From: Octopus sinensis
Lineage: Eukaryota
Assembly (NCBI RefSeq): GCF_006345805.1
Contig: NW_021833076.1
Coordinates: forward strand, 84,758 to 148,757
Length of the DNA: 64,000 bases
Reading direction: 5' to 3'
Shown one piece after another: positions 289 through 58,690 of this stretch. How positions within the stretch are numbered: position 1 is the stretch's first letter; each line of letters begins with the position of its first letter. A model generated the notes under the pieces. The model saw only the letters and a list, made by a program, of their open reading frames with translations. It had not been told where the DNA came from and did no database searches. A program made the translations under genes and the position numbers.

Positions 289-3200
289 CTAAATAAAATG
301 CGTATAAAAATTCATCATGACATGATAAAACCAATCCAAGTCCGTCAGGTCACAGACAACCGCAAGCCGACCTGACGTAAACAAATAGAAATACTCATTC
401 CATCTGTGACCGTAAGCTGTCGGACGAGCAAATATGAGAGAATCTCAACAGGATCGTCAGTGCAAAGACCAAATCGCTCGTCATAAGATCTAACTCAAAT
501 CCCAAACAATACTTTTTCACAGATTCCAAACAAATAAGGGCCTCTCCATATTTACCATTAACCAACAGAACTCCAATATTCTGATCAACTGAACATGTGT
601 ACTCATCCGTTCCCAAATGAATCAACGCTCGGCAAGTTTTCTGGAAATTGTCAACCATTTGGGAGACATCTACGAACTAGAAATATAAGGACAGTCCAAC
701 TCCTTCGATGACAGAAGACGCAGATTTAGCGAGGTTTTGATAGCTCTCAATAAGAAGCATCACGCTGTACAACAGACTGAGAAATAACTCGATTGTCAGT
801 TCATTGGAAGAAGACAGGCATGTGAGCACGGACTCGTAGTTTTCCTTAGATTTGTGCATTTGGATAATTCGAAACTGAAGTGCATTTGGAATGTATTCCT
901 AGCCATTAGCAGAAATATATACTTCCGAGAAATAACAACAAATGTACGGCCACCGGAACGTCGACGTATCAAACAAAGTAAGTAGTTGTTCTATTGTATA
1001 ATTGGAGGGTATACTCAGACTGTCGTTCATAACCACAAACACATTCATGGTCGACACTGATGCACTACACTGCATCGACTTGAGGAGACTAGTGAAGTAC
1101 TCAATCAGCCCGATCAGACTCTTCTACAACCAAATACCAATTCACCAACCCTAATCAATCGCCGGTAGAAGAAAAAAACATTATTCGTCCGCAAGTTGGG
1201 ATCCTCAATGCGGGTAATGGAGGAACGGGGCGAATTGCCTCGACTGCCAATTTGCTGAGGAATGTCCTCATCACTGAACTCGTTTATATTCACGTAGGAA
1301 ATGTCGATTTCATCAGATTGTGAAGACGTCTTTGATTGGCACTAAAGATGAGGGAACTCTGGCAACATCAGTCTCATCCTCGTTATTCTCGCAGGAATAA
1401 AAAATTGTTTGTGCCTGTTCTTCGCTCTCGAATTTATTCTACAAACTAAAAGACCAGACAAACATCGTCACCGTAGAGAAAACGGAATGCCTTAGAAATG
1501 CAATAGTTGGAACTTTCCGAAGTCGAGGACATCATTGTCCCATCTGAAAATGACGAAAATCACCAACTCTGCGAAGATATGGGATCTTCCACAAAAATAT
1601 GTTCAGAGTTGACCGTCGACATTTTTGTGCGCGGAAATCTCGGAGTCAGCCCCAAGCGAGTCAACAGAGTGAACAAGCTGTAGTAAAAATACTCCTAAAC
1701 AAGTGAAAAGGAATAAGCACACTGAAGAGTAAATAAAATCTGAGACCGGATAAGTCACAGAAAGGTTTTTAGACGAGTCAGTCCCCGATAGACTAAACTC
1801 GAGAATGCGACCTACAAACAGTGTTGTGTATAATTTACCAGGAAGAGAACAACCAATCTGTTGATCCAACCCCACAATGCTGAATACTCTCCTATAGGCT
1901 CTCCTGTATAGAATGTCGGTGGATTCAATGTCCATTAATTTGTCTTCGGGGAAATTGGAGGACTTGTCCACTACCAACTTCATCAAATTCATTGCCGTCG
2001 CAGAATTGGGAGACTGAATAAACATTGAAAGGGAAACATTTAATGCCACGGTGGCAGTCACACACAGCTGTTTCACCGCCACCTCACTATTAAGCACTCC
2101 TTCGTCCAATTCGACCAGGGAGATGAGAGTTTGAAGGGCAGAAAAAGAATACCCACATGTTTCTACAATCTATGGAGACTACACAATCCCACGACTAACA
2201 CGACAGACGAGCTGAACGCAGTCGGCCGAGGGAATGTGAAAGCAATCCTTTACATATTTTACGACGCATTGAATCCAAATTTTTGCACTCTTTTCAAATG
2301 TACGGGAAGAATATCGGCCCAAAACAGTCACCAAATTGTCACATCTCTTCCTCGATTTGACAATCTTCAAATGAGCCAAAAGAACACCTCAATGATTGAT
2401 GCAGCAGCCGACTGAGCAAATTGGTCAGGATCGTGGTAGTGCGACGCCATGTAGGGAATCAAAATTAAGATGACGAGGGCCACCACATCTCTCGATGGCT
2501 TATAGAAGAAGACCTCGGAATAAAAAGGAAATAATTCAAAGATCAAGCACCAAGCCAATGACTTGTTCTCTTTTTTTGAATAGAGTCCCTGCAAACATCG
2601 ATACAAGAAAAGAAACATATAGAAAGTGGGGGAGAATGCCTTCAAAGTCATCAGACTGTAATCCCGCCAATTTATTTCTGAATACGTCCATTTGCAGTTT
2701 CCCGAATAGGGTCACGACCAACGAGCACAGTTGTAATCCAAAGAAATACAAAACATCATTCGACAACATGAACGCCGACCCACATGCGAAAACAGTCGAA
2801 TATAATTCTTCCGGACACTCCACTTGGTGTTTATAACAATCAAATAGTTTCACAGAGGTGACAAACGTGGACATTAACTGTGAAAAGAATTGTCGCTTTT
2901 ATACTTAATGAATCAAAATAAACCTGAGCATCCTCGATGTTCTCCAAATCGACTCCCTCGACATAGTAAACCAACCTTTTGACAAATTCCATGCTGACGG
3001 GAATTCCCAGCGCCTCATATATCTACAGTGAATAGATTATCAACACACCTGCAACGACCGAATGGCAAAGTGGGAATCAGGCGAGGAAAAAACCAAGTCC
3101 ATACACAAGTGGGCCCATTTGGAATTCAAATCGGGCAAAATAGTACAGACTTGGAGAATATCGCAAACTAATGAAGACACCAAATCAGTAGAACAGACAC

Positions 3201-6200
3201 TCTCCAAACAATTACACCACGTCCAGCGTGGAGTACTGAAAATGTAAAAATACACGCACTCGGAAAATAGCATTCGCCTCAGTCTGTCCAATATTTTACT
3301 TGGTGAGTCACTCTCCGACACGGTAAATTGAGATCCATTGCCAAAGTGAAATCGAAAATAACTGGGACTCAGATGTGTGACAATTTTATGCAAAATAATC
3401 TTGCATTTTGGCAGTATCAAATCACGTGTCGAGTCAAGACCTAAGAATGAGGGGTCTGAAAATACCAAGAACTGCAACATGAAGAACGAGTGGCGCAATT
3501 TAGAGAAACTCGGCGTCTGTCGTGTGCATTATAATTTCCTCTGATATAAAGAGAGCAGAAAAACAGCTGAAATTGAGTGAATATAGAAACATGGGAAAAT
3601 CGCGAAGGGAAATGGATTCCACTGGGAAGTAGTCTTTTAAGTTCATAAACAAGGACGGGTTCACAGAGAATAGCTCATCTTGATTACCAAAATCGTCTTC
3701 AGGAGGCAAACTGGTCGACCCGTCTTTGATATAAAGGGAATCCTCTTTAAGGAAGGAATAGTATGGAATTGTCAGCGTTCGAGTGAATCTGCAGTTTGTG
3801 GGAGTTGGACTAATCAAGTCAAGTTGGACCTTCTGTAAGACGACGTGGGCAATGGGGGACTGGACTATCCACCGCATAATACAATTACTCTAAGAGTCCC
3901 CAATTGGCACTAACCACCAACATGAATTTATTTGGCATGACCATGGCCATCATTTTGAGATATTCATAAATCACTTCAAAGTTGTTGTGTACTGAACTCA
4001 GAGTTGACCACAGACAACCAACTTGAACAGCATATGAATCCATGAACTTACAACATAGAGTAGCACAATACCTTAACTGTGATGAACATGAGGTTATTAA
4101 GAACAAGGTCAGTAATTTGCACACCACGACTGCTCTCGCTAGTCCGGACCAATTGAATATTTGCGAGCCACGGCTGCAGGACTTGGAAAATTGCCAAAAG
4201 CACAGAGTGAGATGCGATCAAGATTTTAGCCGACAAATCTAAAACAGGCAAATAATATTTTATAACATAAAAACGAAATCAACCACTGACCTGAAAAAAT
4301 GTTAATTGAAAGATGATCAAAAATATGCGAAAACTGAGTGGACGGGGACTGGAAGTGTACTCCCTCGGAGGGAGCGAGGACATTGAACAAGTAATCAGGA
4401 AGATCGAGAGTGGAGAGCATCTTGTTTGATGACATCTCTAACAGTAATTGATGGGAGAGAGTGACGGCGTCGTGGATAGGAAAACAGGAAACAACCAGTG
4501 AAAATACAAATAACTCTATAAATAGAGAACGAGGCAAATGACTAGGAATATAATGATAAAACCAACCAGGCCAATGCAAAGGGTGCAAAGGATATGTAGT
4601 AGCGGGAAAACTCGTGGACTGGGGAACTATAGCAGTGACATATGATATAATGAATGTGCTGCGTATCACTTCTCAACAATCCTCCAAACAAATGGGAACA
4701 CAACATAGCCTACAATGAGGAGACGAAATAACATTATTTTCAGCGGCTTCGTATAGGCCAAAAAAATATCGACCACAGAACTCTTCTGCGTCGAGGAATG
4801 CGCCACAAGAGACCAACCGAATTATGGCGTCATCACACATTTTGACCAGACCGATGTCGCCACTAGGGATTGGAATCCTCGGTCTAGAACGAATATGGAT
4901 TATAATCTACGAAATAGATCCAATACTGTTTTCCACGTCACCACGTGACTTCCACTCTGAAATGAATTCAAACATGTCGAGTCGGACATTTGGAGGAATT
5001 AAGCTAGTTCGAATAGAGTCTATAGGGATTATATCCAGCAATGGGGACCAGGCAGTTGGTCCACAAAGAGCGAAAAAAAGGCTAGAAACAAAAACTTCTG
5101 TTCATACAATCCCGAATTATTCGAGTCGAAACAACAGAAGGCCGAATGCCAGTTAACCAGGAATTCAACGACAACGGAAATAAAGTCAGTTCTTCCAATG
5201 TGAATTCTAAAATATACTCATCTCGGGCAACCTTATTTTCATATAACCATTCCGACACAACTGGGTGAGAGTTCGAATCACATTTGAACAAATCAGCATT
5301 TTCCGTTTCCTTCGGGAACTCTTCTCAACTTTTTTGTCGACACACTCTCTCATAATGGGGGATAAGTCTGAAATAACGTCGCTGGGGTCATAAATGAGAC
5401 CAACTAGATGTTGTGCGCTGACAAATGGCCGAGAGACACGATTGCACATTCTGACATTTCAGGACTCTCCCCTCGAAGTGCTGATATGAATAGTCGCAGC
5501 ATTTGGAGACAGGACATTGTGCCCATGTTTACACTCGCAGAGCTTTCGGAGACGTCGGATTTATCCTTTAAGAACCTAGAATTGTAGAATGATGACCACT
5601 CGTAAGAGTCGTTCAACAATGTGCAGTAGATCACCGAAAAGCCCTGCCAAACGGACACGAAGGTACTCCCATACTTCCTTGTGACTAAACTACGGAATAA
5701 TGACGTCGTTTCTGTCCTTCTAAATACAAATTAGCAAATCACTTGTAGATGTTGGAAGAATGATTCGAATTGTTGTATAAAGCTACGAGACGCAAATGGA
5801 TGAGGTGGACTGCAGTTGAAAAGACAGGGGACTCTCTCGACTTGTGCAGAAGAATCGAGTGGAGGAGTTGAGAATATATCTGAATCCATAGACCGTGACC
5901 GTCCGCTATGGACTCGGAATAGTCATGTTTTTTGAACATGGACAAATCAGTGAAGAACTGACAAACTCTCCAAACCCAATTCAACTCGCCAGCACAAGGA
6001 TAAATCTCGGCCACCTGGAAAATCACGGAAATAATTACATTCGATACTCCTAAAAACTCGGATAGAAAACCCGGAAGTATATTCACCAACTCTTTGTCGA
6101 TTGCCGATTTCAGAGACATCTCGGAATGCTTACGGAATAAGGAGGTGAACTCTTACACAGGTCAACTCATCTGCGACAACCAGCAATTGACAGCCGAGGT

Positions 6201-8503: not shown

Positions 8504-8605
8504 TTTTACACACCACTATCAATCAAATTATAATCTTCTTTTAACTCTAGTACAGTTCTCAGAATAATATATTAATTAATTTGTGATTAAATTGTCAATT
8601 GAGGC
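8504..8605. promoter_or_regulatory. Probable bidirectional promoter between FRY (-) and MGME1-like (+)
   Basis: 102-bp AT-rich gap between two divergent ATGs. Confidence 0.5.
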
Positions 8606-9493
8606 ATGTTCAAGTCATCCAAAAAATGTGGACCACTGATAGCGCGATCGATATCACAAGACAATAAAATGTACGAAATCCATCACATGAAATATTACCA
8701 AGACTTGCTAGAGAAGCACAACCATGCCTCACCAATCAGGAAAATCCTTCGACACCCTCTCTACAACACGGACGACAAACCGTTGATTGAACGGATTAAC
8801 CAATTGGATATTCGTGGAAACGACAATAACCAAGACATGCCGCAAATATCGACTATTCTCGACTGGACAAGATCAGTGGAGTCGCACATTGCCCTCGAGA
8901 GGTGGGCAGCGTCCATCATCTCGAATGGCAGAGTTGATGGAGAGTGTCGACCCATCGAACGTGCAAGAATATTTAAAAACAATTTTGAAAAATACTTGCA
9001 ATCGGGGAAAGAGCCCGAGGTAGAGCAGGACTCTGTTCAGGGCCCTTTATGGAGGAGTTTGAGCTCCATTTTGGGTTCAATTTCGCAAAGTGGTTGTGTT
9101 GGCTGTGGAGTATGGCACCCCTTTCTCAACTATAGTGGGAAAGTGGACTGTCTCATCCAATTGAGGTGGCATGTGTATGAGTATAACTAGCAATCTTCTG
9201 TGGTATGTCGCCTGCGTGAAAATAGTATCAAGAAACCAAGAACTGTATGACATTCCAGTCAAACTCTCTGCAATCGCTGGAGCTATCAATTTCAGTCAGC
9301 AGTTTCCTTTTCAAGTTGTCAATTTGTTGTATAAAAGTGTTGCCGACTGATGGTCATTTGTGTTAATGTTTCCGGAGAACCAGCCACACTGCACGTGTTG
9401 GAGGACGACCAATGCCGGGCTTACTGGAATAACTACTTGTATCGTCTGGCTGCATTCAGACTAATGAGTCGGGACATTGTAGTAAACCAATAA
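8606..9493 (+). CDS. MGME1: MGME1-like mitochondrial genome maintenance exonuclease homolog with degenerate PD-(D/E)xK active site
   Basis: PQISTILDWT...LERW, HPFLNYSGKVDC, LYDIPVKLSAIAGAIN, GEPATLH...CRAYWNNYLYRL match MGME1 architecture. Introns 9166-9190 (25 nt) and 9315-9337 (23 nt) restore the frame. Confidence 0.75.
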
Positions 9494-9527
9494 AATCTTT
9501 GATTAATTTAAACATACGTAGAATAAA

Positions 9528-10311: not shown

Positions 10312-11781
10312 ATGGTTATTTCGAATGGCTATGTTCTGCTGTTCTCTCTATTGCTGACTGGAATGGATGTCTTGTATAGTTTCCACATAAATCGAGAATA
10401 CTACCCCTCCATTAATTATTTATTCACGTCCAAGCTCTCCCTCATGGTGCTCATTAGAGGAACTAAAATTGCAGATTATGGGATTTCAAGGTCTTGTAAT
10501 TCTGTACGAGATTGGGCAGCTGACTGTGAGGTTATTAGTGGGGAGACTGCTTAGCGCGGAGATAGAAGTATTGGTAGATGTGATAGTTCAGACTATCAAG
10601 GATAAGTTCTTTGTTTTCTGCATGGAGGTGGGACTGATGGTCTCCTTCTCCTCCATCCACCAGACTGAGAAGAACTACTCCATTTATGTCTTCCTGCTGG
10701 TCACCATCCTCCAATGCTTCCATTGGATCCTCGCCATCAAAATTGACTCGGTTGACTGTCGGGAGTGTTTGTAGATGCACCGAATGGCCAGAATATCCCC
10801 CTTATTCATGTTCCGCACTCTACTTTTAATTCTCATTCTTCTCTTCTGTGACTTGGCGAGTGTCATTCGGAGGGGACAGTTCTCGATATACTCCATCCTC
10901 TCCTTCGAGGTGGCCCTCATGACCATCGACCTCTTCAACTCGTCCTTTCGATTCTTCCTCTACTTGTACGACCACTTCAATGGGGACTCGGACTCCTCGG
11001 GGTGTCTCCTCTACGCGGACTGCTTCTTTGGTATCCTTCCACATTTACTCAGTCTCCCTCAAATTCATATGCAATTTGTTGTACTGCATCGGACTCGTCT
11101 ATTCCTCCTTCCTCCCTCTCCACTTGCTCAGGAGGACGTACATATTCTTCCAGTACTCGTCGTGCTAACTGGCAGCACGGCCTCTGTTCATTGGACCAAC
11201 ATCGTCAACTCCCGACATGTCATGGCCGTCCTGCAGCAGCCGTATTGGCAGTTGATTATTCCAGACAATTCGATGCCCTCCAAAGTGACTTGGAGAGGGA
11301 CGACATGTGCATCATTTGCAGGGAGCCCATGGTCCCCCTCGAAGCCAGGAAAATAATGTGTGGCCACGTTTTCCACATGCACTGTCTTCAACGGTGGCTC
11401 CAACAACAGCAGACATGTCCAATGTGTAGGGCGGACATCAAAATCCCCACTCCTCCAAGTCCTGTCCTCACTGATTTGGCCGGCCTTCACCCTTTTAGCG
11501 TGGGTCAGATGCCCCTCATCCCCGAAATGTTGAATGGACTGAGTGATGCCGAATTGTCAATGATCGAGTCCATGGAGAGGAGTGCTATTCTCCACCGAAT
11601 TGAGTGTCTGAGGGATATCAACAATCTGCTCAATGCCGCCGCTCTTCGCATGAACCAATACAATCTGTTGTTTCCCCCTTTAATGTGCAGAGTCGTGAAT
11701 GCCCCCCCAGACCAGACGGGCGGATTGACACAGGAAGAGATCCGGCAGAGGAGAGTTGATGCCATCAGACGGGGACTATAA
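10312..11781 (+). CDS. SYVN1: ERAD E3 ubiquitin ligase HRD1/synoviolin
   Basis: N-terminal TM segments (REYYPSINYLFTSK, LQCFHWIL), RING-H2 CIICREPM...CGHVFHMHCLQRWLQQQQTCPMCR, HAF-H segment LSDAELSMIESMERSAILHRIECLRDINNLLNAAALRMNQY, C-terminal EIRQRRV. Confidence 0.9.
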
Positions 11782-14169: not shown

Positions 14170-15380
14170 TACTTAGATAAAGACTAATTATTTATCAATT
14201 GAACTAATTAATGCGTCCTCTTACTCCATTCTCCTCCTCTTTGAGCCAATCTCTTCGATGGGCACACTCATCCATCTCACAGGGTTGGCCTCTTCTGTGG
14301 TCGTTCTCAAGTTCTACTCAATGACCTCACTTGGCAGAGCCTCTTCCGTTGTTCCATTTGTAAAACGAGTCGTTTGGCATTCTTCTGGCGGGATCATTCC
14401 AAATTTGTGTTCTACACGCATACTCTCCAATGTTTTTCTGATAACCACCGACTGAATGTAAGCTCGTGTAAGTTCTTCCAAACCAATAGTATCGCAGTGA
14501 TGTTTATAGTATTTACTCACAACACCATCCCACGTTAGTACCAATGGTACTATGGTTACCTTGGCTTTGTGGATTAATCCCAGTTCACTGGCAAGCAGGT
14601 CGTACTTGTGGAGCTTTTCCACTTCGACTTGCTTCAATTTTTTTTGAGAGGTGATTCCAATCTCTATAAGCGTGATTGTGTTCCTCATTTTGTCAAGTAC
14701 AAAGATATCCGGCTTGTTATTCTCAACCTTCGTATCCGTATTAATTGTCGTGTCAACACGAATCTCCACAGAGTTATTCGCAACCACTGATTGAACAGAG
14801 TGGGTTTTCAATTTCTTAGATTTCTTGATTCCATACTCCCTGCATAGATGTAGATGTACACATTTCACTACTTCGTTGTGTCGTCGTAAGTAGTCACTAT
14901 TCAGCATTCGACCACACCTCGTTGCTAAGTGGTCAACAGTCTTTTTGGAAGAGTTACAGTGACTGCAAATTGCCCCAACATTGTCGAAAAATAGATTACG
15001 GTCCTGTATAAAGCACAGCAAAGCCTCAGATCTTGGTGAATTATTTCCATGTGATAACCAATGAGAGGATTCTGCAACATTGACATTGGAATCAAACAAT
15101 CAAAGAGAATTGCATGTAATGTTTTTTTTCATTATTTGCTCAATTAAGCTGTTCTTCTGCAATTCTCTCAGCATGTTCAAATCAAGGCTTCCAATATCTT
15201 GGATGTTGTATTTGCGCTTGAGGTATTCAGCAATTGTGGCCAAATGTGTTCTCTTTGAATTGATGACCATTTACGCATCAAAACAGGAAATGCCTGTTGC
15301 GTTTATTTGCCAAGATATTGCCAACGTGTTCTTTTTCCTCAAGTTAATAATAAAAATTGGGATTAAATCAAAAGGGGTGG
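14170..15380 (-). mobile_element. R4/Dong-like non-LTR retrotransposon, 3' portion (CCHC finger + restriction-like endonuclease)
   Basis: CSHCNSSKKTVDHLATRC...RRHNEVVKCVHLHLC, KPDIFVLDK...LIEIGIT; homologous to copies at 42.2, 50.7 and 61.9 kb. Confidence 0.85.
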
Positions 15381-26665: not shown

Positions 26666-29407
26666 TTACGTAAAACTGTAGTTATCGTAAAAGTAGTAGT
26701 TCCCGGGAGGGTCCTCTACTTTGATTGCGTTTTGGCTGTTTGACCAATCGCTTTTTCCATTCTGTTTTAAAAGCGGGATTTTTTCTTGCTTGATTAGACT
26801 CAGCAAATTGTCAATGCTCCGGGAAAGACCTTTAATAGGACACTGACAAAATTAGTGAGAGATCTGCACCGTAATTCTGGGATCTGCTTCTTCTTTTACA
26901 GATTTGTTAATTCTGGTCTTTCGAATCCCCTGCTTCTTTTTCTTCTTTGGTTGTGTAGTGGAACCTAAACGTCAGTGCTTGGGTCACTTGGAAGTTGCCG
27001 ACATTCTTCTGCGTGAGTCACCCAGCCTTGTTTTTTGCAACGGGTGCTACAAAAATATACTTCTCTGCACCGGTTGCACGGAAAAAGCGGAACCAACATT
27101 CGCCCACACTCGTAGCAAACGTTACTCGGAAATCTACATTTTAGCATTCAAAGCCACTTTTTTGGAGTTGTTTCGTTAGTCTGTGTAAATGTCAAAGTCT
27201 GGTTAGTTCGTCCCGGACAACCGAGCACCTTCATCACCATGTCTCCATGCTTAGCCAAAGTCGGAATATAAATGCATCTCGCCTTGCTATTCCGGACTAG
27301 TTTGATTGGTGTCCTCAAAATACCAATTTCTCCGCCCTCAACTTCTTGGTCAAATCTCAAAGCTTCCACTTCTCTGATCTTCTTGCGTATCTGTGTGGCA
27401 AGGAAAGACACGAGTTCATTAAATTCGGACACTTTTGCTTTGTCTTCTGTACTGAGCGTGTAGAAGGGGACACTGAAAAGTCTTTTTGACTAGACAGTGA
27501 TACATAAAACTACGTTCTCATAGTAGTTGTACACGTGATCCAAACAGGTTCCTAGCGATTTCTTGTTTTCTACAGCGACCTGTGCCAAAATGTCCATTTC
27601 CGAGTTCAGACACTTTTTGACCTAAAGATCAAAATGAGAAATGCAACAAATGATATTTTCTCGTGTATGGGAATCTTGTTACTCGTCAAGAGGACACAGA
27701 GAGAGTTGGATCGAGGGAGACCCAAGTCGAGGGTGATCGAAGCCCCGTTTTCCATCAACAAGTCTGCAGTCTCGGGGTTGTTCTGAGACAATGCTAAAGA
27801 AAGGGCGGAGTTGCCGCTCCAAATGGCGTTCACTTCAGCCCCATATTTTATTAGGAGAGCAATGTTTTTGTGTCTAAGCTGGGACAATGCAGGTGTTTTG
27901 GGAACCTCAGCATTTACATTCGTGCTGCAAGCTATATGTAGAGGAGTCATTCCTGCCGTCGGAATGATAGAATATATGTAGAGGGAGTTCATAATCTGAA
28001 TACACAAAGCAGTCACTACCGATTCTTCGAGGAGTCCACTCTCGGATACCCTGGCGTTGACATCTGCTCCAGCATTGAGAAGATCCTCTGTGATCTCGGT
28101 CCCCTGTTCGACATGCATTGCGACAGCCAAATGAATGAGATTGCAGGATAACTGAATGCTCAAAGTGGCAGTACTTTGTTCTTCATGTTTGGATCGGCAT
28201 TTCTGAGTAACAAAATTCTGACCATCTCTGAGTCCCCACACAGGACTGCCTCGTACAAAGGAAAGGTTCGAGCAGATCCCTGATTTGGATTAGCCCCGTA
28301 GTCCAACAAGATCTCGATAATTTCACGTTGAAGGGCGTTTAGTTGCAGGGAATGAGACGTATTGAACGCAGATAAAAGTTCATTTGTGCTGGGAAACAGT
28401 CTATGCTGAAGAGGCGATTCTCTGTAGTAATTCTGGAAACTGAGCAACAAAGCCGATCTGTCGTCGTCTGACAGGCGCCCCACGTCCGCCCGAAATTTGA
28501 GGAGGCGACTGACGATTTGTTTATTGCAGAGAACTGCTGCATACATCAATGCTGTCCTTCCTTGCTTGTCGCACACGTCTAAACAGATTTGTTCATTCAG
28601 CAAAGCCGAGTTGACATTCCGAATGTTATTTTCGGCACAATCCATAATAAATTGTTTCGATAATTTCTCCAACCTTCCTTCCTTCAAAAACAACTTCCGG
28701 TCCCCTCCAATTTCTCTTATTCGGTAGTTTCCATAGTTAGCGTCACGGATATGACTAATAAATGAGTTCCATGAGAAATACCGAAGAACGTGACTCTGCA
28801 TATTCTGAAATATGGGGGAATTGTTCTCCAGTGTTACAAATTCCTTACTCAGTGAGTCCGTGTCATCAATAGAGTACTGAGATTGGAAATAGTCAGACTC
28901 GAATTCCTTAATATTGAGTGCAATGTTGGCTCGGGTTAGACAATTCTTGTAAACAGAGGAAGGGACTCCCTCTTGTCCAGCATCACTCAGTCGGGGCTTG
29001 TGGTTTTGCTTTACCAGGCACTGAACCGTGTTAGAGATTTTGTGTGATTTGTCATATTCTAATAAATCGACTCGCAAGGGAATAGTCCCATATAATTTCA
29101 TCAATTTTCCGCCAAAAAACAGACCAACATCCTGAGTGTCGTCCTCATAACTGACGACTCCAGGACCGAAGGGAAATCCACGGAGAAACATTCCCTTTCA
29201 ATATGATTTGAAGGATATACAGCATAAGATGAACCATCGACATATTTGCAGTATCCAAACCCCTCCTTTTCGTTAAAATAAAACGTTCCTTCGTAACAGT
29301 CCCCATTTTCACACGTCTCCACTCCGCGGCCGTGTTTCTTACCACAAAATAAGCGGACAGTACTCTAACATGTAATCAAACTTTCTTACCTTTTGATTTT
29401 CGATCAT
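26666..29407 (-). CDS. ANKMY1: Ankyrin repeat and MYND domain-containing protein 1 (MORN + ANK + MYND)
   Basis: MORN GRGVETCENGDCYEG and GFPFGPGVVSYED, ankyrins GRTALMYAA / GMTPLHIAC / GNSALSLAL, MYND CYECGR...CNRCREVYFCSTRCKKQGWVTHAEEC. Ends inferred. Confidence 0.85.
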
Positions 29408-38513: not shown

Positions 38514-40430
38514 CAGTAAAGCCTCTGGTGCTCGCCACCTCTGTTACTCGCCACCTCTATTGCTCGCCACATATTTTTCAAAAAATTAAAAATTTCTAGT
38601 AAATTTTGATAAATATTCTATTGCTCGCCATTTTCTAAATCTCGCAATTAATTTTTTAAAATATTTTTTTGGTTAAACTATTTTTTATAAAATATTTCAT
38701 CCACGCTAAATTCAATATGCGTAAGTGCGCAAGATTGTCTTTTAATGAAAAATGTCGCATTATTGCGTACATGGAGGAGAACAAAAGTCTCACGATGGAC
38801 CCTTATAGCTTACATTTTTTCTTCTGTTTTGAAGAACAAAATATCTCGAAGGGCTGTGAACGATTTAAGACTTGGAAAAGAGAAAATAATGTCTACTGAT
38901 CCTATTTTCTCCAATAAGAAGAGATTATCTAATCTAACTTATTCTGTTATTGACACCGAACTATTAACTTGGATGGAATATATTGAGCTTAGAGGGGGGT
39001 TTCTGGACGATAATTCAATTTTGTTGAAAGAAAAGAACATTGCTAATATTTATGGAATTAAAGAGTTTAAAGCCAGCAATGGATGGCTAAGCAAGTTCAA
39101 GATACGGAACAACTTAAAATTGAGGACTTTACATGGAGAATCAGGATCTACTGCAGTTGATCAGAAACAAGAAATTGATGCATTTACTTCTTTGATCTCT
39201 GCAAAGATTCGACAATATAATGCTGAAAACATTTATAACGCTGATGAAACTGGGATTTTTTACAAATCTATCCCTTCAAAAAGTGTTTGTCAGAAGGTCC
39301 CATATGGACATAAAATCCTTAAAGAATGGTTTAATTTTTATTTATTTTTTTAGATTTTCTTTGTTGCTATGCTCAAATATGACTGGGACAGACAAAAAAT
39401 TCTACTTATGATTGGAAAGTTCCAGAAACCTCGCTGGTTTAAAAATTTTAAAGTCGAAAATTTTGTCGATTACTGTCATTCACCAAAAGCATGGATGACA
39501 AGTAAAATTTTTAAGGAATGGCTTTTAACATGGGATAGGCATCTAAAGAAACGAACAAATTCTTTTAGTTGTAGATCGATGCCCATCCCATAAACTTTAC
39601 GCTGATTTACAGTCAATTGAAGTTCTTTACCTACCTTCGAAGACTACAACAATTCTACAACCAATGGATCAAGGAATCATTAGATCCTTCAAAGGACATT
39701 TTAATAAACTTAAATTTGAGTTAATGTTAGAAAAAATTGAAAATGGAAAAAATCCACTGGAAGCACATAAAAAATTAACATTAAAAGACGGTCTTCTTTT
39801 TACATATTTTGTCTGGAAAAAAGTAACGACCAAAACAATTACAAATTGTTTCGAACATTCAAAATGGATCGAATGTGAAAATCAACTCGAAAGACCAACT
39901 GTTGAAATTGATAATTATGATCAAATGGTAAATATCTTGAAAATATTGGACCGTCTGGATAAAGATGTTTTTATTAATCATGAATTTACCGAAATAGATG
40001 AAATTGAAGATTACCTTAATATTGCTGGAGATTCTTTTTCACAAAAATATGACGATGAAGATACTCATAATGACGAATCTCATGTGAATTCAGAAGAGGC
40101 TTTGAAAATGTTGAAAAGAATAAAGTCATTCTTTTATCAAAATGAAAATTTTGATATAAATTCGTTGGAACTAATCGACACCGTTATTAGAAATATGGCT
40201 GAATTAAAAAAAACTATTAAATATTTTTTTAGTTAATTTTTTCCTTTTAATTTCTTTCAATTCTCTTTGTTTCTTCGCTCAAATATGACTTGAAAGGCTC
40301 ACTTATGATCGGAAAGTATCGAACACGGAGATGTTTTCAAAATTTCAATGTCAACAAATTTATTGATTATTTATATTGCTCGCCATTTTTTCTTCGGTCC
40401 CGAAAATGGCGAGCAATAGAGGCTTTACTG
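38514..40430 (+). mobile_element. Complete pogo/Tigger element (lineage B, 1.9 kb) with 25-nt intron
   Basis: TA TSD, TIRs CAGTAAAGCCTCT..TGCTCGCCA, FKASNGWL, YNADETG, PKAWMT, LQPMDQGII; subterminal CTCGCCA repeats. Confidence 0.93.
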
Positions 40431-45597: not shown

Positions 45598-47386
45598 GAA
45601 CAAGACAAACTTCACTAACAAACTCGACTTAATAGCTGCAGGAATTGAACAGCTAAAGGACTCTTCAAAAATGTTTACGGCAACCGCCTACTCAACAGGA
45701 AAAAACAAACTAACAAACTCAAAATCCATGACAGCAATGGAAGATTCATCACAAATCCCAAAGAGCAGGCTGAATATATAGCCTCGTATTTCGAGAGTAT
45801 ATTAACCGCTCACGGAGAAATATCCGATTACACCAGCGGATACACCACTCATCTCAGCCTACCTATCACCACCGGTGAAGTATCAACTGCAATAGCCAAA
45901 CTTAAAAATGGCCGCTCCTCTGGACCGGATGGAATAAATTCAGAACTGTTTAAATACGGACCGCCTGCACTAACAGACAAACTGGCGGAGCTACTCAATG
46001 GTATGTTTATGAAAAAGGAATTCCTCGGTCTTGATTCCGGATTATTAATACCGATCCAAAAGCCTAACAAGCAGGCTGGGCCTGTCGAAAATCTACGCCC
46101 TATAATCTTGCTAAACACCTTACGGAAACTTTGGGATTAGTTACACTGAACCGAATAAGAGAACAAGTGGACAACTATCTATCCCCGAGTCATAGTGGAT
46201 TTAGGACAGGAAGATCCACCGCCGATGCTGTCTGGGCCACAAGTGGTACTGCGCTATCACCCAGAGATACAAAAGTGCAACAACAGTCCTGGGAATAGAC
46301 CTGTCTAGGGCCTTTGACACGGTACGCCGTGGTCTACTCCTCAAAATACTGGAACATTCCTGGACCCTGACTCTGTCAATATGATAAGAGTACTACTATC
46401 GAACACAAAGCTCAAGGTGCGGGTCGGCACGGCGTTTTCCCGTGAATTCACGTGCAACGTCGGTACCCCTCAGGGAGACGCCCTCTCGCCGTTGCTATTC
46501 GTGATCTATCTGGAGACGGCACTACGAGACCTTCGAAAATTCTATGCTGGCAATATCGTCGAAATTGTATATGCAGATGACGTCGACTTCGTGTCAGACG
46601 ACAAATCGGCCTTACTTCGACTCCTTGAAGTGGCACCTGCTGAGCTGAACAGATGGTTCCTTAAAATGAACGTTGGAAAAACCGACATCGTTGAAATCAT
46701 GAGGATGGAGAGCAGCTCAAGTGAAGCCTGGCGCAAAACGAACAAACTCGGTTCTCTACTTGGGGACGGCCATGATATTGTCAGAAGAAAGGCTCTCGCT
46801 TGGGCCACGATGAACAAGATAAAGAAAGAGTGGATCGGCAAACGACGACTCTGTACGTCACTTCGTCTGAGGATGTATGAAGCCTTTGTCAAACCAATCC
46901 TGACATATAATTCGGCGACCTGGGGAATGTCTAGTACTGAACAACGTGGACTCGATTCTTTTCACCGCAGGCAACTTAGATCCCTACTGGGATTGAACTG
47001 GCCTATAAGAATCAACCAGGAATCGCTATACAATAGATGCAGAACTGGCCCTCTGAGTGTGGAAATCGTTAATATGCGGTGGAGGTTATTTGGCCATATT
47101 CTACGAATGGACATGCTTCCCCAGCTAACATAGCAATGGAGGGCTACTTCCTGAAAGAGGGATCGAGCTTCCGTGGACGTCCACGTGTTACGCTGCCGAA
47201 AACACTTGACGGAGACCTGAAATGTGTGAAGAAAAGGCTAAGGAGTGGTGAGGATCTGGACGAGCTGAGGAAACTCGCTCACGACAGAGGAGGTTGGAGG
47301 AGGCTGGTTCAAAGGATTGTTTTTAATGCTGCACGAGTAAAATTATAACTAATATGATTCTACGTATGTTGCAAATAATAATAATA
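45598..47386 (+). mobile_element. RTE-like non-LTR retrotransposon, RT-only copy 1
   Basis: 13-bp TSD ATTCTTGTTTGGT (45585-45597, 47387-47399), (TAA)n tail, GIDLSRAFD, GTPQGDALSP, YADD, RWRLFGHILR, RGRPR. Confidence 0.92.
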
Positions 47387-48228: not shown

Positions 48229-49759
48229 CAGTCTGTACCAAAACATTATAATATTGGCAAATTTATCAATAAATCATTTGTATCTCTACTTATATCAATT
48301 TTTAAGTGTTAATTTTTAGCATGTAATTTCTAAATTGACTTATCTAACTATTCTTAAATAAATTAATTCTTAAAAATATATTACATGCTAAAAATATATT
48401 GTCATGTACCAAAACATTATAATAATTTTTGTCATGTAACAAAAGATTATAATATTTCTAGTATTTGATGTTTTTCCCTCGAGATTTTAGTACAGCATCT
48501 ACTCTTTTTGCATTGATTCATTAAAATTTTTATTTCTTCAATTTTAATTTCATTCCATATGATTTTCAGTTCATTTTTTAGATCCTCTATCGTTTTTATT
48601 CCAAGAGCCATAACTTTTTGTTTCATTATTCCCCAAAGATTTTCGAATGGATTAAGATCAGGCGAATTAGGAGGCCATTTCATAGATTAATTTTTTGGTT
48701 TTGAATCCACTCAATCGTATCTTTTGCAGTGTGTGCAGGAGCATTGTCCTGTTGAAAAATGTAATTACATCCATCATACAACTTTTGACCAGTTGAAATT
48801 AAATTTTTTTCTAATATTTCTCTGTATACTAATCCATTTACAGTTGAATCAATAATTGAAAGCGGGCTCAACCCATTAAAACTCATCGCTGCCCACACCA
48901 TAGCTCCTTTTCTGTAATGAAGCTTTTGATTTATGCATGAAGGATGAATTGTTTCATTTCTTTTACGCCAAACATACGCACCTTTTTCACCAATTGACAG
49001 CAGAAACTTAGATTCGTCAGAAAAAATAACTTTGGACCACTGTTCTATAGTCCAGTTTATTCTCCCTTTAGCCCAAGCTAATCTTTGCTTCTGTTGTTTT
49101 AATGTTAGGAAGGGCTTGCAAACAGGGGTTCTGGAAAAAAATCCCAATTGGTTTAGACGTCTGCTTATTGTCATTCGGCTCAAATTAATTCCATGTGGAA
49201 TAAGTTTTTCGGAAATTTCCTTAATAGAGATGAATCTATTTTCCATCAAAACTCTTTGAATAACTCTTTCTTCTCGTGAAGACGTTAATTTCGGCCTTCC
49301 CTTTCCGACACGATTTTTTTTCTCGTTATTCTGCTTTCGCAACACGTTGGAAACTGATCCTTGTGAGCAATTTGTGATTTCCGCGATTTTGTTTTGACTA
49401 AGTCCAAAGGTATGGAGATTTAAAATAATTTTTTTGGTATCAAATGACAAGTCGCTTTTTTGTCCCTTGTCAATTAAATAATAACGTGTTAAATTTAAAA
49501 TAAATTTGTTTTTGTATGAAAAATATAAAAATTATTATAATGTTATGGTACATGACAGAAATTATTATAATGTTATGGTACATGACAATTTGAATCACCC
49601 CAACCAGTGATCTTGTAAAATCAAATAATTTTTTAAATAGTTAAAGAAAGTAAATTTGAATTTGGATGTAAAAAATTAAGTCATAAAAATGGATATTTGT
49701 GAAAATAGAGTTATATTTTAACTAAATTTACGAGTATTATAATGTTTTGGTACAGACTG
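48229..49759 (-). mobile_element. Complete Tc1 element (DD34E) with IR/DR ends, one frameshift
   Basis: TA TSDs, terminal CAGTCTGTACCAAAACATTATAATA at both ends, three GTACCAAAACATTATAATA-like repeats per end, FSDESKF / QQDNAPAH / SPDLNPFE with 34 residues between D and E. Confidence 0.95.
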
Positions 49760-50655
49760 TACTAACATATTGTGTGTTGTGCTTTTATTTTCCAATTAAT
49801 GTAATTAGCAAATATTTTATTAAAATTAAATCATAATAATTACAACTAATCTACTAAGTTTTTTGAAATTAGAATATTTATAAGATTTTCAAAGAAAAAC
49901 TAAATATGAATTTTGAATCATTTTTTTTGGCGAGGAGTGTAAGATGTCTTCTCGCTCAAATAAGAAAAGTCGTCATTATCAAAACGAATATTTAAAATAT
50001 GGGTTTATTCAAAGTACTGAAGATACAAAACAGCCTTATTGTCTTATTTGTCAATGTTCTTTCTCAAATGAGGCGATGAAGCCATCACGATTACAGGATC
50101 ATCTAAAACGCAAGCACCCGGATAAAATATCAAAGCCGATTGAATATTTTCAAAATTTAAAATACAAGATTATATGTCCTGATTTACATCAATCTTTAAA
50201 TATTGTAATTAAAACAATTAACAGAATAAAAACACGAAGCAAATGTGATCGTCTTTTTAGAAAGTTTTGTAAGGATGCTGGTGAAGATTTTATTCGACTT
50301 TTATTACACACGGAAGTAAGATGGCTTTCAAAAGGAAATGCTTTAGAAAAATTTGTTAATCTTTACGATGCAATAGTCGCATTTTTGCAGACTGAAGAAG
50401 ACTTGGTTTTGGCAGAAGAGATAATTTCACGAAAAAATGATATATTCTATTTGAATTGGATTTTTACAAAATTTAATGAAATTACTATTCTTCTTCAAGG
50501 AAATTTTGTCAACATGATTGATTGCAAAAAAATAATGAAAACATTTGCAAGAAAATTATTGCTTTATCGACATAATTTTTCTATAAATCAGTTTGGAAAC
50601 ATTTCACAACTATCTGAGATAAGTAAATATTTTAGTCAAAACAATATTATGTGAC

Positions 50656-57929: not shown

Positions 57930-58690
57930 CAGTGGTTCCCAACCTTAAGGTGCTCGCGGAACCCTTTTGGGCTAATTTATTTTTTGCGGAACCCTTCCAA
58001 TTCAATTATTATAATTTCACTTAAAACATAATAGTAATAACCAAAAACAATTTTAATGTGAACATTGAGGTAATTTTTTATCATAGCATAGTTGTGTAAC
58101 GTTAGGAGTTATTGTTGACAACTGTATCCTCATATCAGCGGAAGCATTAAGTTTATTTCTATATTTTGTTTTGGTGGATGTATATATGAAAACCTTGGTA
58201 CAAATCCAGAAATTTTTCCGATCATACATTTAGCTCCATCGCTACAAACATCCACACATTTATTCCAATTTATGTTTTTTGCAAAAAAATAATTTTTAAT
58301 AGTGTTGAAAATATTTTCCCCAGTACAATTACGCTCCAACGATTCGCTCATTAACATGTCTTCTTCAATAATATCGTCAAAAGGGTATCGAACGAAAACC
58401 AATAAAACTGCCAATCCTTCAACATCAGTAGATTCATCAATTTGAATAGCGAAACCATTCGAATTATTCAAACGAATTAGTAACTGTGTTTCAATATTTT
58501 TAGAAAGTTCCTGAATTCGCCTTGAAATAGTATTATTTGACAAAGGAACAAGATCCAGTTTCTTAGACATTTGTTCGCCATAAATACACTCGATGATTTT
58601 TTTTGAACATGGCTTTATAAGATTTTCGGCAATTGTATGTGTCTCTCCACAACGTGCTACAAGATAACTCACCTGTTTGATTAAAAAATG
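57930..58690 (-). mobile_element. Truncated Buster-type hAT (one end + transposase fragment)
   Basis: Terminal CAGTGGTTCCCAACC with GCGGAACCC repeats; GETHTIAENLIKPC, PLSNNTISRRI, AIQIDESTDV, DVCSDGAKCM. Confidence 0.8.

What the first reader, a model, noticed from the sequence alone, without database searches (positions are those of the whole stretch)
8606..9493. MGME1 homologue appears to be a pseudo-nuclease
The fold-defining segments are kept, but motif I GxxFH reads ARIFK (His lost), motif III IDWKT reads VACVK (Asp and Lys lost), and motif IV QxxxY reads KLSAI. Only motif II (GKVDC) survives. In human MGME1 the equivalent His180, Asp251 and Lys253 are required for catalysis (numbering from memory). 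The ORF is otherwise intact, implying a retained non-catalytic role. If the host is a dicyemid, whose mtDNA is known to be split into minicircles, this is a candidate link between mtDNA processing and genome fragmentation (inference).
Basis: partly seen in the sequence, partly recalled or inferred. Interest (0 to 1): 0.7.

Follow-up and report, generated by a model that had tools for sequence, protein, structure and literature searches.

The report
Catalytically dead MGME1 exonuclease homologue
A small three-exon animal gene encodes a relative of MGME1, the enzyme that trims mitochondrial DNA ends; it keeps the enzyme's shape but has lost five of the seven cutting residues, so it probably binds DNA without cutting it, and any link to unusual mitochondrial DNA is untested.

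Summary
Window 8606-9493 (+) is a three-exon gene with introns of 25 and 23 nt, encoding a 279-aa MGME1 homologue. It matches human MGME1 in the PDB at E=8e-14 and a profile of 150 family representatives at 158 bits. The AlphaFold model (pLDDT 83) superposes on human MGME1.

Both tiny introns lie at the position and phase of introns in thrips and crinoid MGME1 genes. The second is also shared with a coral gene. The gene model therefore stands without cDNA.

Five of seven catalytic positions are replaced: His180>Lys124, Glu223>Gly166, Asp251>Cys195, Gln271>Lys211, Tyr275>Ile215. Each is kept in 144-149 of 150 family representatives. Asp238 is kept.

No alternative splice restores (D/E)xK. Neutral decay this deep would rarely leave an open frame (P about 1e-3 or less).

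Best reading: a retained, non-catalytic MGME1 derivative that may still bind ssDNA.

Not shown: expression, localisation, absence of an active paralogue, host identity (dicyemid favoured over myxobolid myxozoan), and any link to minicircles. Thrips MGME1-like proteins show a similar partial loss.

The parts
8606..9165 (+). Exon 1 (Met1 to the first two bases of codon 187). Holds the N-terminal region, the helical part, motif Ia, motif I and motif II.
   Evidence: ATG at 8606, with an in-frame TGA at 8600 just upstream. ORF listed. Profile alignment covers residues 32-272.
9166..9190 (+). Intron 1: 25 nt, GT..AG, phase 2 (codon AG|C = Ser187), in the hairpin between motifs II and III.
   Evidence: Same position and phase as an intron of the Frankliniella fusca gene (TAC AG|gtaag...ttcag|A GGA, codon 297). 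The same position (phase not checked) also holds an intron in the Antedon mediterranea gene, at the boundary at residue 221. It contains the stop codon that ends the exon 1 ORF.
9191..9314 (+). Exon 2 (last base of codon 187 to Gln228). Holds the degenerate motif III strand and motif IV helix.
9315..9337 (+). Intron 2: 23 nt, GT..AG, phase 0, after ..FPFQ228.
   Evidence: Same position and phase as introns after ..YPFQ248 in Pocillopora meandrina and ..FPYQ341 in F. fusca. Antedon has an intron at the same position, after ..TQHQ265 (phase not checked).
9338..9493 (+). Exon 3 (Cys229 to Gln279, plus TAA at 9491-9493). Holds the last strands and the C-terminal helix.
8975..8977 (+). Codon AAA = Lys124, at the position of His180 (motif Ia, metal ligand).
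   Evidence: Family column is His in 144/150. Role of His180: PMC6237815.
9101..9103 (+). Codon GGC = Gly166, at the position of Glu223 (motif I).
   Evidence: Family column is Glu in 146/150. E223Q lowers activity.
9146..9148 (+). Codon GAC = Asp181, at the position of Asp238 (motif II). This is the one acidic ligand kept.
   Evidence: Family column is Asp in 147/150.
9213..9221 (+). Codons TGC GTG AAA = Cys195-Val196-Lys197, at the positions of Asp251-Trp252-Lys253 (motif III). The register is uncertain by one residue.
   Evidence: Family columns: D/E in 149/150, W in 141/150, K in 149/150. Alignment posterior is about 0.5-0.6. Model strands 176-186 and 190-199 with a turn at 187-189.
9261..9275 (+). 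Codons for Lys211-Leu-Ser-Ala-Ile215, at the position of motif IV QhxxY (Gln271..Tyr275).
   Evidence: Family columns: Gln in 149/150, Tyr in 146/150. Both residues contact the phosphates flanking the scissile bond in human MGME1.
9489..9494 (+). AATAAA hexamer overlapping the stop codon; a likely polyadenylation signal.
   Evidence: function inferred.

Best explanation
Window 8606-9493 is a real, intact, spliced gene of an animal with ultra-short introns. It descends from the mitochondrial 5'-3'/3'-5' ssDNA exonuclease MGME1, a RecB-type PD-(D/E)XK nuclease.

Shown: the fold-forming segments are kept, but the metal-binding and catalytic constellation has been dismantled. The His, Glu and Asp/Glu ligands are now Lys124, Gly166 and Cys195. 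The Gln and Tyr that hold the phosphates flanking the scissile bond are now Lys211 and Ile215. Only Asp181, and probably Lys197, remain.

Inferred: with a single carboxylate left, the protein cannot assemble the two-metal site that human MGME1 uses, so it is most likely not a Mg2+/Mn2+-dependent nuclease. The open frame, the splice sites, the conserved intron positions and the structural residues have all survived a divergence deep enough to replace five near-invariant residues. The gene has therefore most likely been kept by selection as a non-catalytic protein.

Proposed mechanism (inferred): it still threads or grips single-stranded DNA. Distal DNA-contact positions are kept: Ser82, Leu97, Trp100, Arg201 and Tyr206, corresponding to Thr134, Leu149 (printed as Ile149 in the paper; the family column is Leu in 141/150), Trp152, Lys257 and Phe266. 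Three lysines (124, 197, 211) now line the former metal pocket and could bind a backbone phosphate directly. It would then act as an ssDNA, 5'-end or flap binder, or as a partner of the replisome, rather than as an exonuclease.

If it is the only MGME1 gene of its genome and is mitochondrial (neither shown), its host lacks MGME1 nuclease activity.
For: Homology: with names.

Fold: AlphaFold2 model with pLDDT 83.4 and pTM 0.81. Top Foldseek hits are all human MGME1 chains (E about 3e-15; 5zyv_A target-normalised TM 0.83, rmsd 3.0 A), followed by RecE, Cas4 and AdnA.

Catalytic columns: family conservation is 144-149/150, against query K,G,D,C,K,K,I. Roles of these residues and mutant activities: PMC6237815.

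Gene model: both introns are at conserved positions, with phase matched in F. fusca (both) and Pocillopora (intron 2). A 25-nt intron at homeodomain position 46/47 of a LIM-homeobox gene elsewhere in the window shows that such introns are normal here.

No splice alternative restores (D/E)xK.

Selection argument: simulated neutral substitution leaves the frame open with P=0.008 at 27 % amino-acid change and 3e-4 at 53 %. The query keeps 18 of 25 non-catalytic columns conserved at 90 % or more, against 2 of 7 catalytic ones.

Canonical MGME1s reach Pfam PF12705 through motifs II-IV; this protein does not.

AATAAA sits at the stop codon.
Against: There is no expression, protein or activity data. 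No close relative exists in any collection searched (best 35 % identity), so dN/dS could not be computed.

The contrast between catalytic and other conserved columns is only suggestive (Fisher p=0.07). The protein is the second most divergent of 151 sequences overall.

PD-(D/E)XK enzymes are known for relocating catalytic residues (own knowledge), so residual or altered activity is not excluded.

The model was built from a family alignment, so it cannot independently prove that the fold is kept. No coordinates were available to inspect the pocket.

The N-terminus is short: 18 residues with +4 charge and no acidic residue. Mitochondrial targeting is unverified.

Only 64 kb of the genome was visible, so an active paralogue cannot be excluded (one search covers the window only).
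Confidence: 0.55

Rival explanations
1. Redundant paralogue. The genome also holds a canonical, active MGME1 elsewhere. This copy is a duplicate that lost catalysis, either neofunctionalised or drifting, so the organism is not MGME1-deficient and nothing follows for its mtDNA.
For: Only 64 kb of the genome was visible, and that stretch holds no second copy. Thrips carry similarly degenerate MGME1-like proteins, and whether thrips also hold a canonical copy could not be established.
Against: Most named relatives appear as one locus per species in the clusters read, although Oratosquilla oratoria shows two loci (LOC143019512 and LOC143019488) in one cluster. This was not counted systematically. 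The gene keeps both conserved intron positions, so it is not a retrocopy. Dicyema japonicum, the favoured host type, has a strongly reduced gene set of 5,012 genes (PMC6736024), which makes retained duplicates less likely. That last point is an inference.
Confidence: 0.2
2. Relic on its way out. The gene no longer has a function, because mtDNA maintenance in this lineage no longer needs MGME1, and it simply has not yet acquired a stop or frameshift.
For: It is the second most divergent member of the family at conserved columns. It has deletions in the GEEGF loop and in the Lys-rich loop after motif III. No relatives are available to demonstrate constraint.
Against: Neutral drift large enough to replace 5 of 7 near-invariant residues would leave the 279-codon frame open only about 0.03-0.8 % of the time, counting substitutions alone. 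In addition, both GT..AG introns, the start codon, the AATAAA signal and most structural residues are intact.
Confidence: 0.13
3. Still an enzyme. The active site has been rewired (for example Asp181 plus Lys197 with another acidic residue or a Cys-bound metal), and the protein keeps nuclease or another phosphoryl-transfer activity.
For: Asp181 and probably Lys197 remain. Cysteines sit at or beside former ligand positions (Cys164, Cys167, Cys182, Cys195), and Cys content is 3.6 % against a family mean of 1.6 %. Catalytic-residue migration is known in the PD-(D/E)XK superfamily (own knowledge).
Against: In human MGME1 the single changes H180Q, E223Q, D238N and D251N each strongly reduce activity, and mutation of Lys253 also lowers it (PMC6237815). 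Here three of the four metal-site residues (His180, Glu223, Asp251) are changed at once. Gln271 and Tyr275, which contact the phosphates flanking the scissile bond, are changed as well. Cys and Lys are not Mg2+ ligands (own knowledge).
Confidence: 0.08
4. Artefact. The apparent substitutions come from a wrong gene model, or from assembly or sequencing error.
For: No cDNA was available. The exact donor of intron 1 has near-equivalent alternatives (9169 or 9175) that change the hairpin length by 1-3 residues.
Against: The five substitutions lie in two different exons and need many independent base changes. All 844 enumerated splice models with a product of at least 240 aa were scored, and none restores the motifs without losing the motif IV helix (at least 39 bits lower). 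The chosen introns match conserved positions, with phase matched where it was checked.
Confidence: 0.04

Closest known systems
Human MGME1 (C20orf72/Ddk1), a mitochondrial RecB-type PD-(D/E)XK ssDNA exonuclease; structures 5zyt/5zyu/5zyv/5zyw/8xa9
   Same: Sequence homology extends across the whole nuclease domain (E=8e-14, query 77-268 against chain 39-238). The predicted fold is the same. Motif II Asp and the following Cys are kept, as is probably the motif III Lys. The structural motifs are kept as well (P-x-[VI]-[ST]..IL, LERW, HP.L.Y.G, YD.P, GA.N, G.PA..H, C..YW). Intron positions are shared with other animal MGME1 genes.
   Different: His180, Glu223, Asp251, Gln271 and Tyr275 are replaced by Lys, Gly, Cys, Lys and Ile. 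Trp252 and Thr254 are replaced by Val and Ile. Four residues are missing in the GEDGF loop and four in the Lys-rich loop after motif III, including Lys259. The N-terminal region is about half the family median length (78 against 158 residues before the PSVT motif). There is no Pfam PF12705 hit.
Inactivated nuclease-like domain of RecC in RecBCD (Rigden 2005, PMC1185551)
   Same: It is a RecB-type PD-(D/E)xK fold that has lost its catalytic residues yet is retained for a DNA-handling role. This is the best-known precedent for the kind of protein proposed here (for the paper; the channel function is from own knowledge).
   Different: RecC is a bacterial domain inside a large multi-subunit helicase-nuclease. 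It is not a stand-alone eukaryotic protein, and it has no specific sequence relationship to MGME1. A function for the window protein has not been shown.
Thrips MGME1-like proteins (Frankliniella fusca KAK3914885.1, F. occidentalis XP_026280212.1, Megalurothrips usitatus KAJ1522988.1)
   Same: They are the only other family representatives with 3 or more of the 7 catalytic columns changed: His to K/F/Q, Glu to R/Q, Tyr to K/T, and in two of them Asp238 to H/T. Like the window protein, P0136 has no Pfam PF12705 hit. The F. fusca gene shares both intron positions.
   Different: They keep motif III (D/E)xK and the motif IV Gln. They are 500-550 aa long with extended tails. They are not specially similar to the window protein (ranks 87, 136 and 140 of 150), so the loss is independent.
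Loss of the mtSSB gene in Psocodea with fragmented mitochondrial genomes (PMC12797587)
   Same: It is a published case in which a nuclear gene of the mtDNA replication machinery is lost in animal lineages whose mtDNA is split into minichromosomes.
   Different: It involves a different gene and outright loss rather than a retained dead enzyme. The association is supported by a multi-species survey, whereas no such survey exists for MGME1. That paper does not mention exonucleases.

Membership tests
MGME1 family (homology/descent) | Significant sequence similarity over the whole nuclease domain to known MGME1 proteins, with MGME1 as the best match | tested here: met
   The only PDB matches at E<=10 are the four human MGME1 sequences. 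There are 269 library hits, and named ones are MGME1. Family profile scores 158 bits, E=1e-50 against one sequence.
MGME1 family (homology/descent) | RecB-type PD-(D/E)XK fold as in the MGME1 crystal structures | tested here: met
   AF2 model pLDDT 83.4. Foldseek ranks 1-9 are all human MGME1, with target-normalised TM up to 0.83. Caveat: the model was built from the family alignment.
MGME1 family (homology/descent) | Gene structure shared with other animal MGME1 genes | tested here: met
   Intron 1 matches the F. fusca intron in position and phase and the Antedon intron in position. Intron 2 matches the F. fusca and Pocillopora introns in position and phase and the Antedon intron in position.
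MGME1-type active exonuclease | Motif Ia His (His180), ligand of the A-site metal | tested here: not met
   Lys124 in the profile alignment (Glu128 in the pairwise alignment to human MGME1). Family has His in 144/150.
MGME1-type active exonuclease | Motif I Glu (Glu223) | tested here: not met
   Gly166. Family has Glu in 146/150.
MGME1-type active exonuclease | Motif II Asp (Asp238) | tested here: met
   Asp181 within GKVDC.
MGME1-type active exonuclease | Motif III acidic residue of (D/E)xK (Asp251) | tested here: not met
   Cys195 (or Ala194 in the other register). No D or E lies between residues 182 and 203. No splice alternative supplies one.
MGME1-type active exonuclease | Motif III Lys (Lys253) | tested here: inconclusive
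   Lys197 aligns with it in the profile alignment (posterior about 0.5-0.6) and fits the hairpin of the model. With an ungapped hairpin the position is Val196.
MGME1-type active exonuclease | Motif IV QhxxY (Gln271, Tyr275) | tested here: not met
   Lys211 and Ile215. Family has Gln in 149/150 and Tyr in 146/150.
MGME1-type active exonuclease | Metal-dependent ssDNA exonuclease activity | not testable with these tools
   Needs purified protein.
MGME1-type active exonuclease | Mitochondrial localisation (N-terminal targeting sequence) | tested here: inconclusive
   Residues 1-18 carry +4 charge, have no acidic residue, are Ser-rich and have pLDDT<50. This is compatible with a short presequence, but no predictor or experiment was available.
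Pseudo-nuclease (retained inactive PD-(D/E)XK protein, as the RecC nuclease-like domain) | Nuclease fold kept and catalytic residues lost | tested here: met
Pseudo-nuclease (retained inactive PD-(D/E)XK protein, as the RecC nuclease-like domain) | Maintained by selection, or has a demonstrated non-catalytic function | tested here: inconclusive
   The open frame is improbable under neutral decay, and structural columns are mostly kept (p=0.07). There are no orthologues for dN/dS and no functional data.

The most novel reading that the evidence does not exclude
Loss of MGME1 nuclease activity may be a recurrent nuclear correlate, and possibly a permissive cause, of fragmented or heavily rearranged animal mitochondrial genomes. 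A dicyemid with gene-sized mtDNA minicircles keeps only a dead MGME1. Thrips, whose mtDNA is highly rearranged and in one species bipartite, independently carry MGME1-like proteins with degenerate active sites. This would parallel the published association of mtSSB loss with fragmentation in lice. Mechanistically, unprocessed 5' flaps and undegraded linear fragments, which are the phenotypes of MGME1-deficient humans and mice, would feed the formation and persistence of subgenomic circles.
Probability: 0.12. Interest if true: 0.85.

Novelty: new variant of a known kind. Interest (0 to 1): 0.55.

Why it matters
MGME1 is one of the few nucleases known to shape mtDNA ends. Its loss in patients and mice gives linear subgenomic fragments, rearrangements and deletions (PMC4222359, PMC5865154, PMC5928156). 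I found no paper that treats MGME1 together with dicyemids, myxozoans or thrips. The one paper that holds both MGME1 and Henneguya/Myxozoa terms, a 2025 review (PMC12730909), was not read.

If this protein is its host's only MGME1 and is mitochondrial, it would be a natural experiment. It would be an animal that has done without MGME1 nuclease activity over evolutionary time yet kept the protein. That points to a non-catalytic role of MGME1, such as end binding or a partnership with the replisome. It also yields a concrete, testable nuclear candidate for why some animal mitochondrial genomes break into small circles.

If an active paralogue exists, the finding shrinks to an ordinary case of a duplicated enzyme turned pseudoenzyme.

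Tried and rejected
- Pfam scan of the spliced protein: no family even at E<=10. Canonical MGME1s reach only a weak PF12705 hit.
- Word-indexed homologue search with the spliced protein: nothing.
- Exact-product look-ups of the exon 1 ORF and two long window ORFs, to identify the source: not on record.
- Search with a retrotransposon RT from the window, to find the source organism: no near-identical hits. The best was 53 % identity. The highest-identity named hits were Octopus sinensis at 53-58 %, followed by Elysia, Sycon and oomycetes. The contig of the top hit carried only an ENA accession.
- Source of the best MGME1 hit, P0001: a Logan transcript contig from SRR21676452 with 48 % GC. The species was not identifiable and nothing suggests it is the same organism.
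- Profile search with the four thrips-type proteins, to see whether thrips also hold a canonical MGME1: only 2 hits returned, so the question stays open.
- Metagenome scan for close relatives: none.
- Rfam and tRNA scans of the window: nothing.
- Second copy within the window: none.
- All GT/GC..AG introns of 15-150 nt in 9060-9420 were enumerated, singly and in pairs. The best-scoring models all give ..NLLWYVACVKIVSRNQELYDIPVKLSAIAGAIN... Models containing any [DE]xK after GKVDC lose at least 39 bits.
- Henneguya salminicola, which has no mtDNA, was considered as host and judged unlikely. Its genome is 29 % GC, against about 39 % for this window.
- Taxon names of 30 relatives were read to place the gene. 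They were arthropods, echinoderms and one coral, which is not informative for the host.
Full report
**1. What is at 8606-9493**

The + strand holds an ATG at 8606, with an in-frame TGA two codons upstream. A 194-codon ORF follows and ends in a stop inside 9166-9190. Removing 9166-9190 (25 nt, GT..AG) and 9315-9337 (23 nt, GT..AG) joins three frames into one 279-codon reading frame that ends at TAA 9491-9493. An AATAAA hexamer at 9489-9494 overlaps the stop codon.

**2. Is the gene model right?**

No cDNA was available, so I used three indirect tests.

(a) Splice enumeration. I listed every GT/GC..AG intron of 15-150 nt between 9060 and 9420, singly and in pairs. This gave 844 distinct products of at least 240 aa, which I scored against a profile built from 150 family members. 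The eight best models (157-162 bits) differ only by 0-4 residues at the junctions, and all read ..NLLWYVACVKIVSRNQELYDIPVKLSAIAGAIN...

(b) Intron conservation. I fetched the genomic loci of four relatives and mapped their exons.
- The Frankliniella fusca gene has a phase-2 intron in the codon aligned with Ser187 (TAC AG|gt..ag|A, against the window's TTG AG|gt..ag|C).
- It also has a phase-0 intron after ..PYQ341, aligned with ..PFQ228.
- The crinoid Antedon mediterranea has introns at both positions; their phase was not checked.
- The coral Pocillopora meandrina has the second one, phase 0 after ..PFQ248.
- The mite Brevipalpus obovatus gene has no introns.

Both tiny gaps are therefore old MGME1 introns shrunk to 23-25 nt, not frameshift scars. 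This also picks 9166-9190 over the near-equivalent donors at 9169 and 9175.

(c) Another short intron in the window. A LIM-homeobox gene at about 56.5 kb on the minus strand needs a 25-nt GT..AG intron at homeodomain position 46/47 to continue ..VIQ|VWFQNRRSKER. Such introns are therefore normal in this genome.

**3. Is it an MGME1 homologue?**

Yes.
- phmmer against all PDB sequences returns only human MGME1 (E=7.8e-14, query 77-268).
- An exhaustive phmmer search of 1.84 billion representatives gives 269 hits at E<1e-3. The best is 7e-25 at 35 % identity.
- The named members of the clusters I read are 'mitochondrial genome maintenance exonuclease 1' from corals, echinoderms, mites, crustaceans and insects.
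- A profile of the 150 listed hits aligns to query residues 32-272 at 158 bits.
- An AlphaFold2 model built on a 95-sequence alignment has pLDDT 83.4 and pTM 0.81.
- Foldseek ranks nine human MGME1 chains first (E about 3e-15; 5zyv_A target-normalised TM 0.83, rmsd 3.0 A over 199 columns). RecE, Cas4, AdnA, Dna2 and EXO5 follow.

No relative closer than 35 % identity exists in any collection I could search.

**4. The catalytic residues**

Yang et al. 2018 (PMC6237815) assign these roles:
- His180 (motif Ia), Asp238 (motif II), Asp251 and the Trp252 carbonyl (motif III) bind the A-site metal.
- Asp238 also binds the B-site metal.
- Glu223 (motif I) holds a B-site water.
- Lys253 orients the attacking water.
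- His180, Asp238, Lys253 and Gln271 contact one phosphate at the active site; Tyr275, Thr134 and the Leu236 backbone contact the adjacent one. The paper does not state which of the two is cleaved.
- H180Q, E223Q, D238N and D251N each reduce or abolish cleavage.

I aligned the 150 relatives, human MGME1 and the query to the family profile. My recalled human sequence has the right residues at all seven numbered positions and agrees with the PDB chain in the region aligned.

| Human position | Family conservation (of 150) | Window protein |
|---|---|---|
| His180 | His 144 | Lys124 |
| Glu223 | Glu 146 | Gly166 |
| Asp238 | Asp 147 | Asp181 |
| Asp251 | Asp/Glu 149 | Cys195 |
| Lys253 | Lys 149 | Lys197 |
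| Gln271 | Gln 149 | Lys211 |
| Tyr275 | Tyr 146 | Ile215 |

(Source.)

Five of seven positions are replaced, including three of the four residues that build the two-metal site. Neighbouring near-invariant residues are also changed: Trp252 to Val196, and Thr254 to Ile198. Lys259 falls in a four-residue deletion.

The register of motif III is the one soft spot, with an alignment posterior of only about 0.5-0.6.
- The profile inserts one residue in the hairpin, giving Cys195 = Asp251 and Lys197 = Lys253.
- In the model, strands 176-186 and 190-199 flank a three-residue turn at 187-189. This puts Cys195 opposite Asp181, so I favour the first register. This is an inference, because no coordinates were available.

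In either register there is no acidic residue between 182 and 203. Canonical MGME1s reach Pfam PF12705 weakly (23-28 bits) through motifs II-IV. The window protein does not reach it even at E<=10.

**5. Decay or retention?**

The protein is very divergent overall. It keeps 65 % of the non-catalytic columns that are at least 80 % conserved, against a family median of 95 %. Only one of the 150 relatives keeps fewer.

Catalytic columns are hit harder than other columns conserved at 90 % or more (2 of 7 kept against 18 of 25). With so few columns this is only suggestive (Fisher p=0.07).

The stronger argument comes from the open frame. I simulated neutral substitution on this CDS. It leaves no stop codon in 0.8 % of runs at 27 % amino-acid change and in 0.03 % at 53 %. 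Replacing 5 of 7 specified residues by drift needs divergence of that order. Indels, which I ignored, would lower the figure further.

Together with the intact start, both splice-site pairs and the poly(A) signal, this favours long-term maintenance of the frame after catalysis was lost. It does not prove function. Relaxed but non-zero constraint, or a recent final loss of function, remains possible.

**6. What it most likely does**

Shown: an MGME1-derived fold whose metal site is gone.

Inferred: it performs no canonical Mg2+/Mn2+-dependent cleavage.

Several DNA contacts away from the cleavage site are kept: Ser82, Leu97, Trp100, Arg201 and Tyr206, at the positions of Thr134, residue 149 (printed as Ile149 in the paper; Leu in the family column, 141/150), Trp152, Lys257 and Phe266. 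The former metal pocket now holds three lysines (124, 197, 211) and one aspartate.

I therefore propose a metal-independent ssDNA or 5'-end binder. The precedent in kind is the inactivated nuclease-like domain of RecC (PMC1185551).

The N-terminus is short. Its first 18 residues carry +4 charge, contain no acidic residue and are disordered in the model. This is compatible with a short mitochondrial presequence but is not tested. By eye, residues 8-11 (CGPL) match the family's LFGP motif (consensus), so little room is left for a long presequence.

**7. The host and the minicircle idea**

The window is eukaryotic and rich in LINE, Tc1-like and other transposon ORFs. It averages about 39 % GC.

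Introns under 30 nt are reported in animals only for Dicyema japonicum and for myxobolid myxozoans (PMC13644364). D. japonicum is 36.7 % GC and 49 % repeats, with many LINE copies (PMC6736024). Henneguya salminicola, the myxozoan without mtDNA, is 29 % GC and is therefore unlikely.

Two weak hints favour a bilaterian and dicyemid origin.
- Intron 1 is shared with an insect and a crinoid but is absent from the one cnidarian gene examined.
- The highest-identity named relatives of a window retrotransposon RT are from Octopus sinensis at 53-58 %; cephalopods are the hosts of dicyemids.

I put dicyemid at roughly 70 %; it is not established.

Dicyemid mtDNA is split into gene-sized circles (PMC6543705). 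MGME1 loss in humans and mice gives linear fragments, rearrangements and deletions.

**8. An unexpected parallel**

Among the 150 representatives, only four others deviate at 3 or more of the 7 catalytic columns. Three are from thrips (Megalurothrips usitatus, Frankliniella fusca, F. occidentalis), and the fourth has no known source.

In these four, the His is K/F/Q/N, the Glu is R/Q/Q/D, Asp238 is H/T/D/Q and the Tyr is K/K/T/C. The three thrips proteins keep motif III (D/E)xK and the motif IV Gln. They are not specially similar to the window protein, so the degeneration is independent.

Thrips mitochondrial genomes are highly rearranged, and one species has a two-chromosome genome (PMC4460840, PMC6971079; PMC12797587). 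I could not establish whether thrips also keep a canonical MGME1.

This raises the prior of the association hypothesis a little. The published association of mtSSB loss with fragmentation in lice (PMC12797587) shows that this kind of link can be tested.

**9. Verdict**

The gene model is well supported.

The 'pseudo-nuclease' reading is the best explanation (about 0.55). An additional 0.2 goes to the same protein being a redundant paralogue. The remainder goes to relic, rewired enzyme or artefact.

I found no paper that treats MGME1 together with dicyemids, myxozoans or thrips. One review holding MGME1 together with Henneguya/Myxozoa terms (PMC12730909) was listed but not read. I rate this a new variant of a known kind, of moderate interest. 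The interest would rise sharply if the gene proves to be the host's only MGME1, or if the association with fragmented mtDNA holds across lineages.

Noticed in passing
Related proteins P0087, P0136, P0140, P0144; locus L003 (Frankliniella fusca JAHWGI010000394.1, gene at 1501-3437): Thrips MGME1-like proteins (500-550 aa) have independently lost the motif Ia His, motif I Glu and motif IV Tyr, and in two cases the motif II Asp. They keep (D/E)xK and the Gln. Thrips mtDNA is highly rearranged and bipartite in one species. Whether thrips also keep a canonical MGME1 could not be settled.
   Followed up: partly
window 56552-57106 (-), intron about 56599-56623: A LIM-homeobox gene. Its homeodomain is interrupted at position 46/47 by a 25-nt GT..AG intron (GTCAGGGTGGGGTCTCTAGTGTTAG), after which the frame continues VWFQNRRSKERR. 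This is independent evidence that the whole window belongs to an ultra-short-intron animal.
   Followed up: partly
window 9095-9215 (residues 164-195 of the MGME1-like protein): Cysteines sit at or beside former active-site positions: Cys164 and Cys167 flank Gly166 (= Glu223), Cys182 follows Asp181, and Cys195 is at Asp251. Cys content is 3.6 % against a family mean of 1.6 %. Whether they form a disulfide or a new metal site is unknown, because no model coordinates were available.
   Followed up: partly
window 62236-63576 (-) and 46381-47133 (+): Two copies of a reverse-transcriptase ORF share an identical stretch of about 250 aa, pointing to a recently active retrotransposon. The highest-identity named relatives are Octopus sinensis proteins at 53-58 %, then Elysia, Sycon and oomycetes. 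This could reflect lophotrochozoan ancestry or host-parasite transfer.
   Followed up: partly
window 36000-62000: An AT-rich stretch (28-37 % GC over most of it) packed with transposon-like ORFs. From the translations, these look like a pogo/Tigger-like element (38745-40236), a Tc1/mariner-like transposase (48680-49450), hAT/ZBED-like ORFs (49944-50654, 55381-55863, 58130-58672, 59633-60235) and RT fragments (50651-51946). They were classified by eye only.
   Followed up: no
window 10775-11781 (+) and 27606-29191 (-): A RING-H2 finger gene and an ankyrin-repeat gene each consist of two overlapping ORFs in different frames. These can be joined by candidate 23-nt GT..AG introns (11153-11175 or 11242-11264, among other candidates; 28174-28152). 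The exact junctions are not resolved.
   Followed up: partly
window 14314-15099 (-) and 50651-51946 (+): Two ORFs share a C-terminal motif (..W/EWLS.GNN.PRSEAL...QDRNLFF....CxHCxxSKKTVDH..). They are probably the same retroelement family. There was no Pfam hit for the first; the second was not scanned.
   Followed up: no
window 8627-8638 (residues 8-11, CGPL): By eye, the N-terminus KKCGPLIARS resembles the conserved LFGP(L/I) motif that lies far upstream of the nuclease domain in other MGME1 proteins (human ..LLCGPV..). The window protein starts only 7 residues before it, so any presequence must be very short.
   Followed up: no
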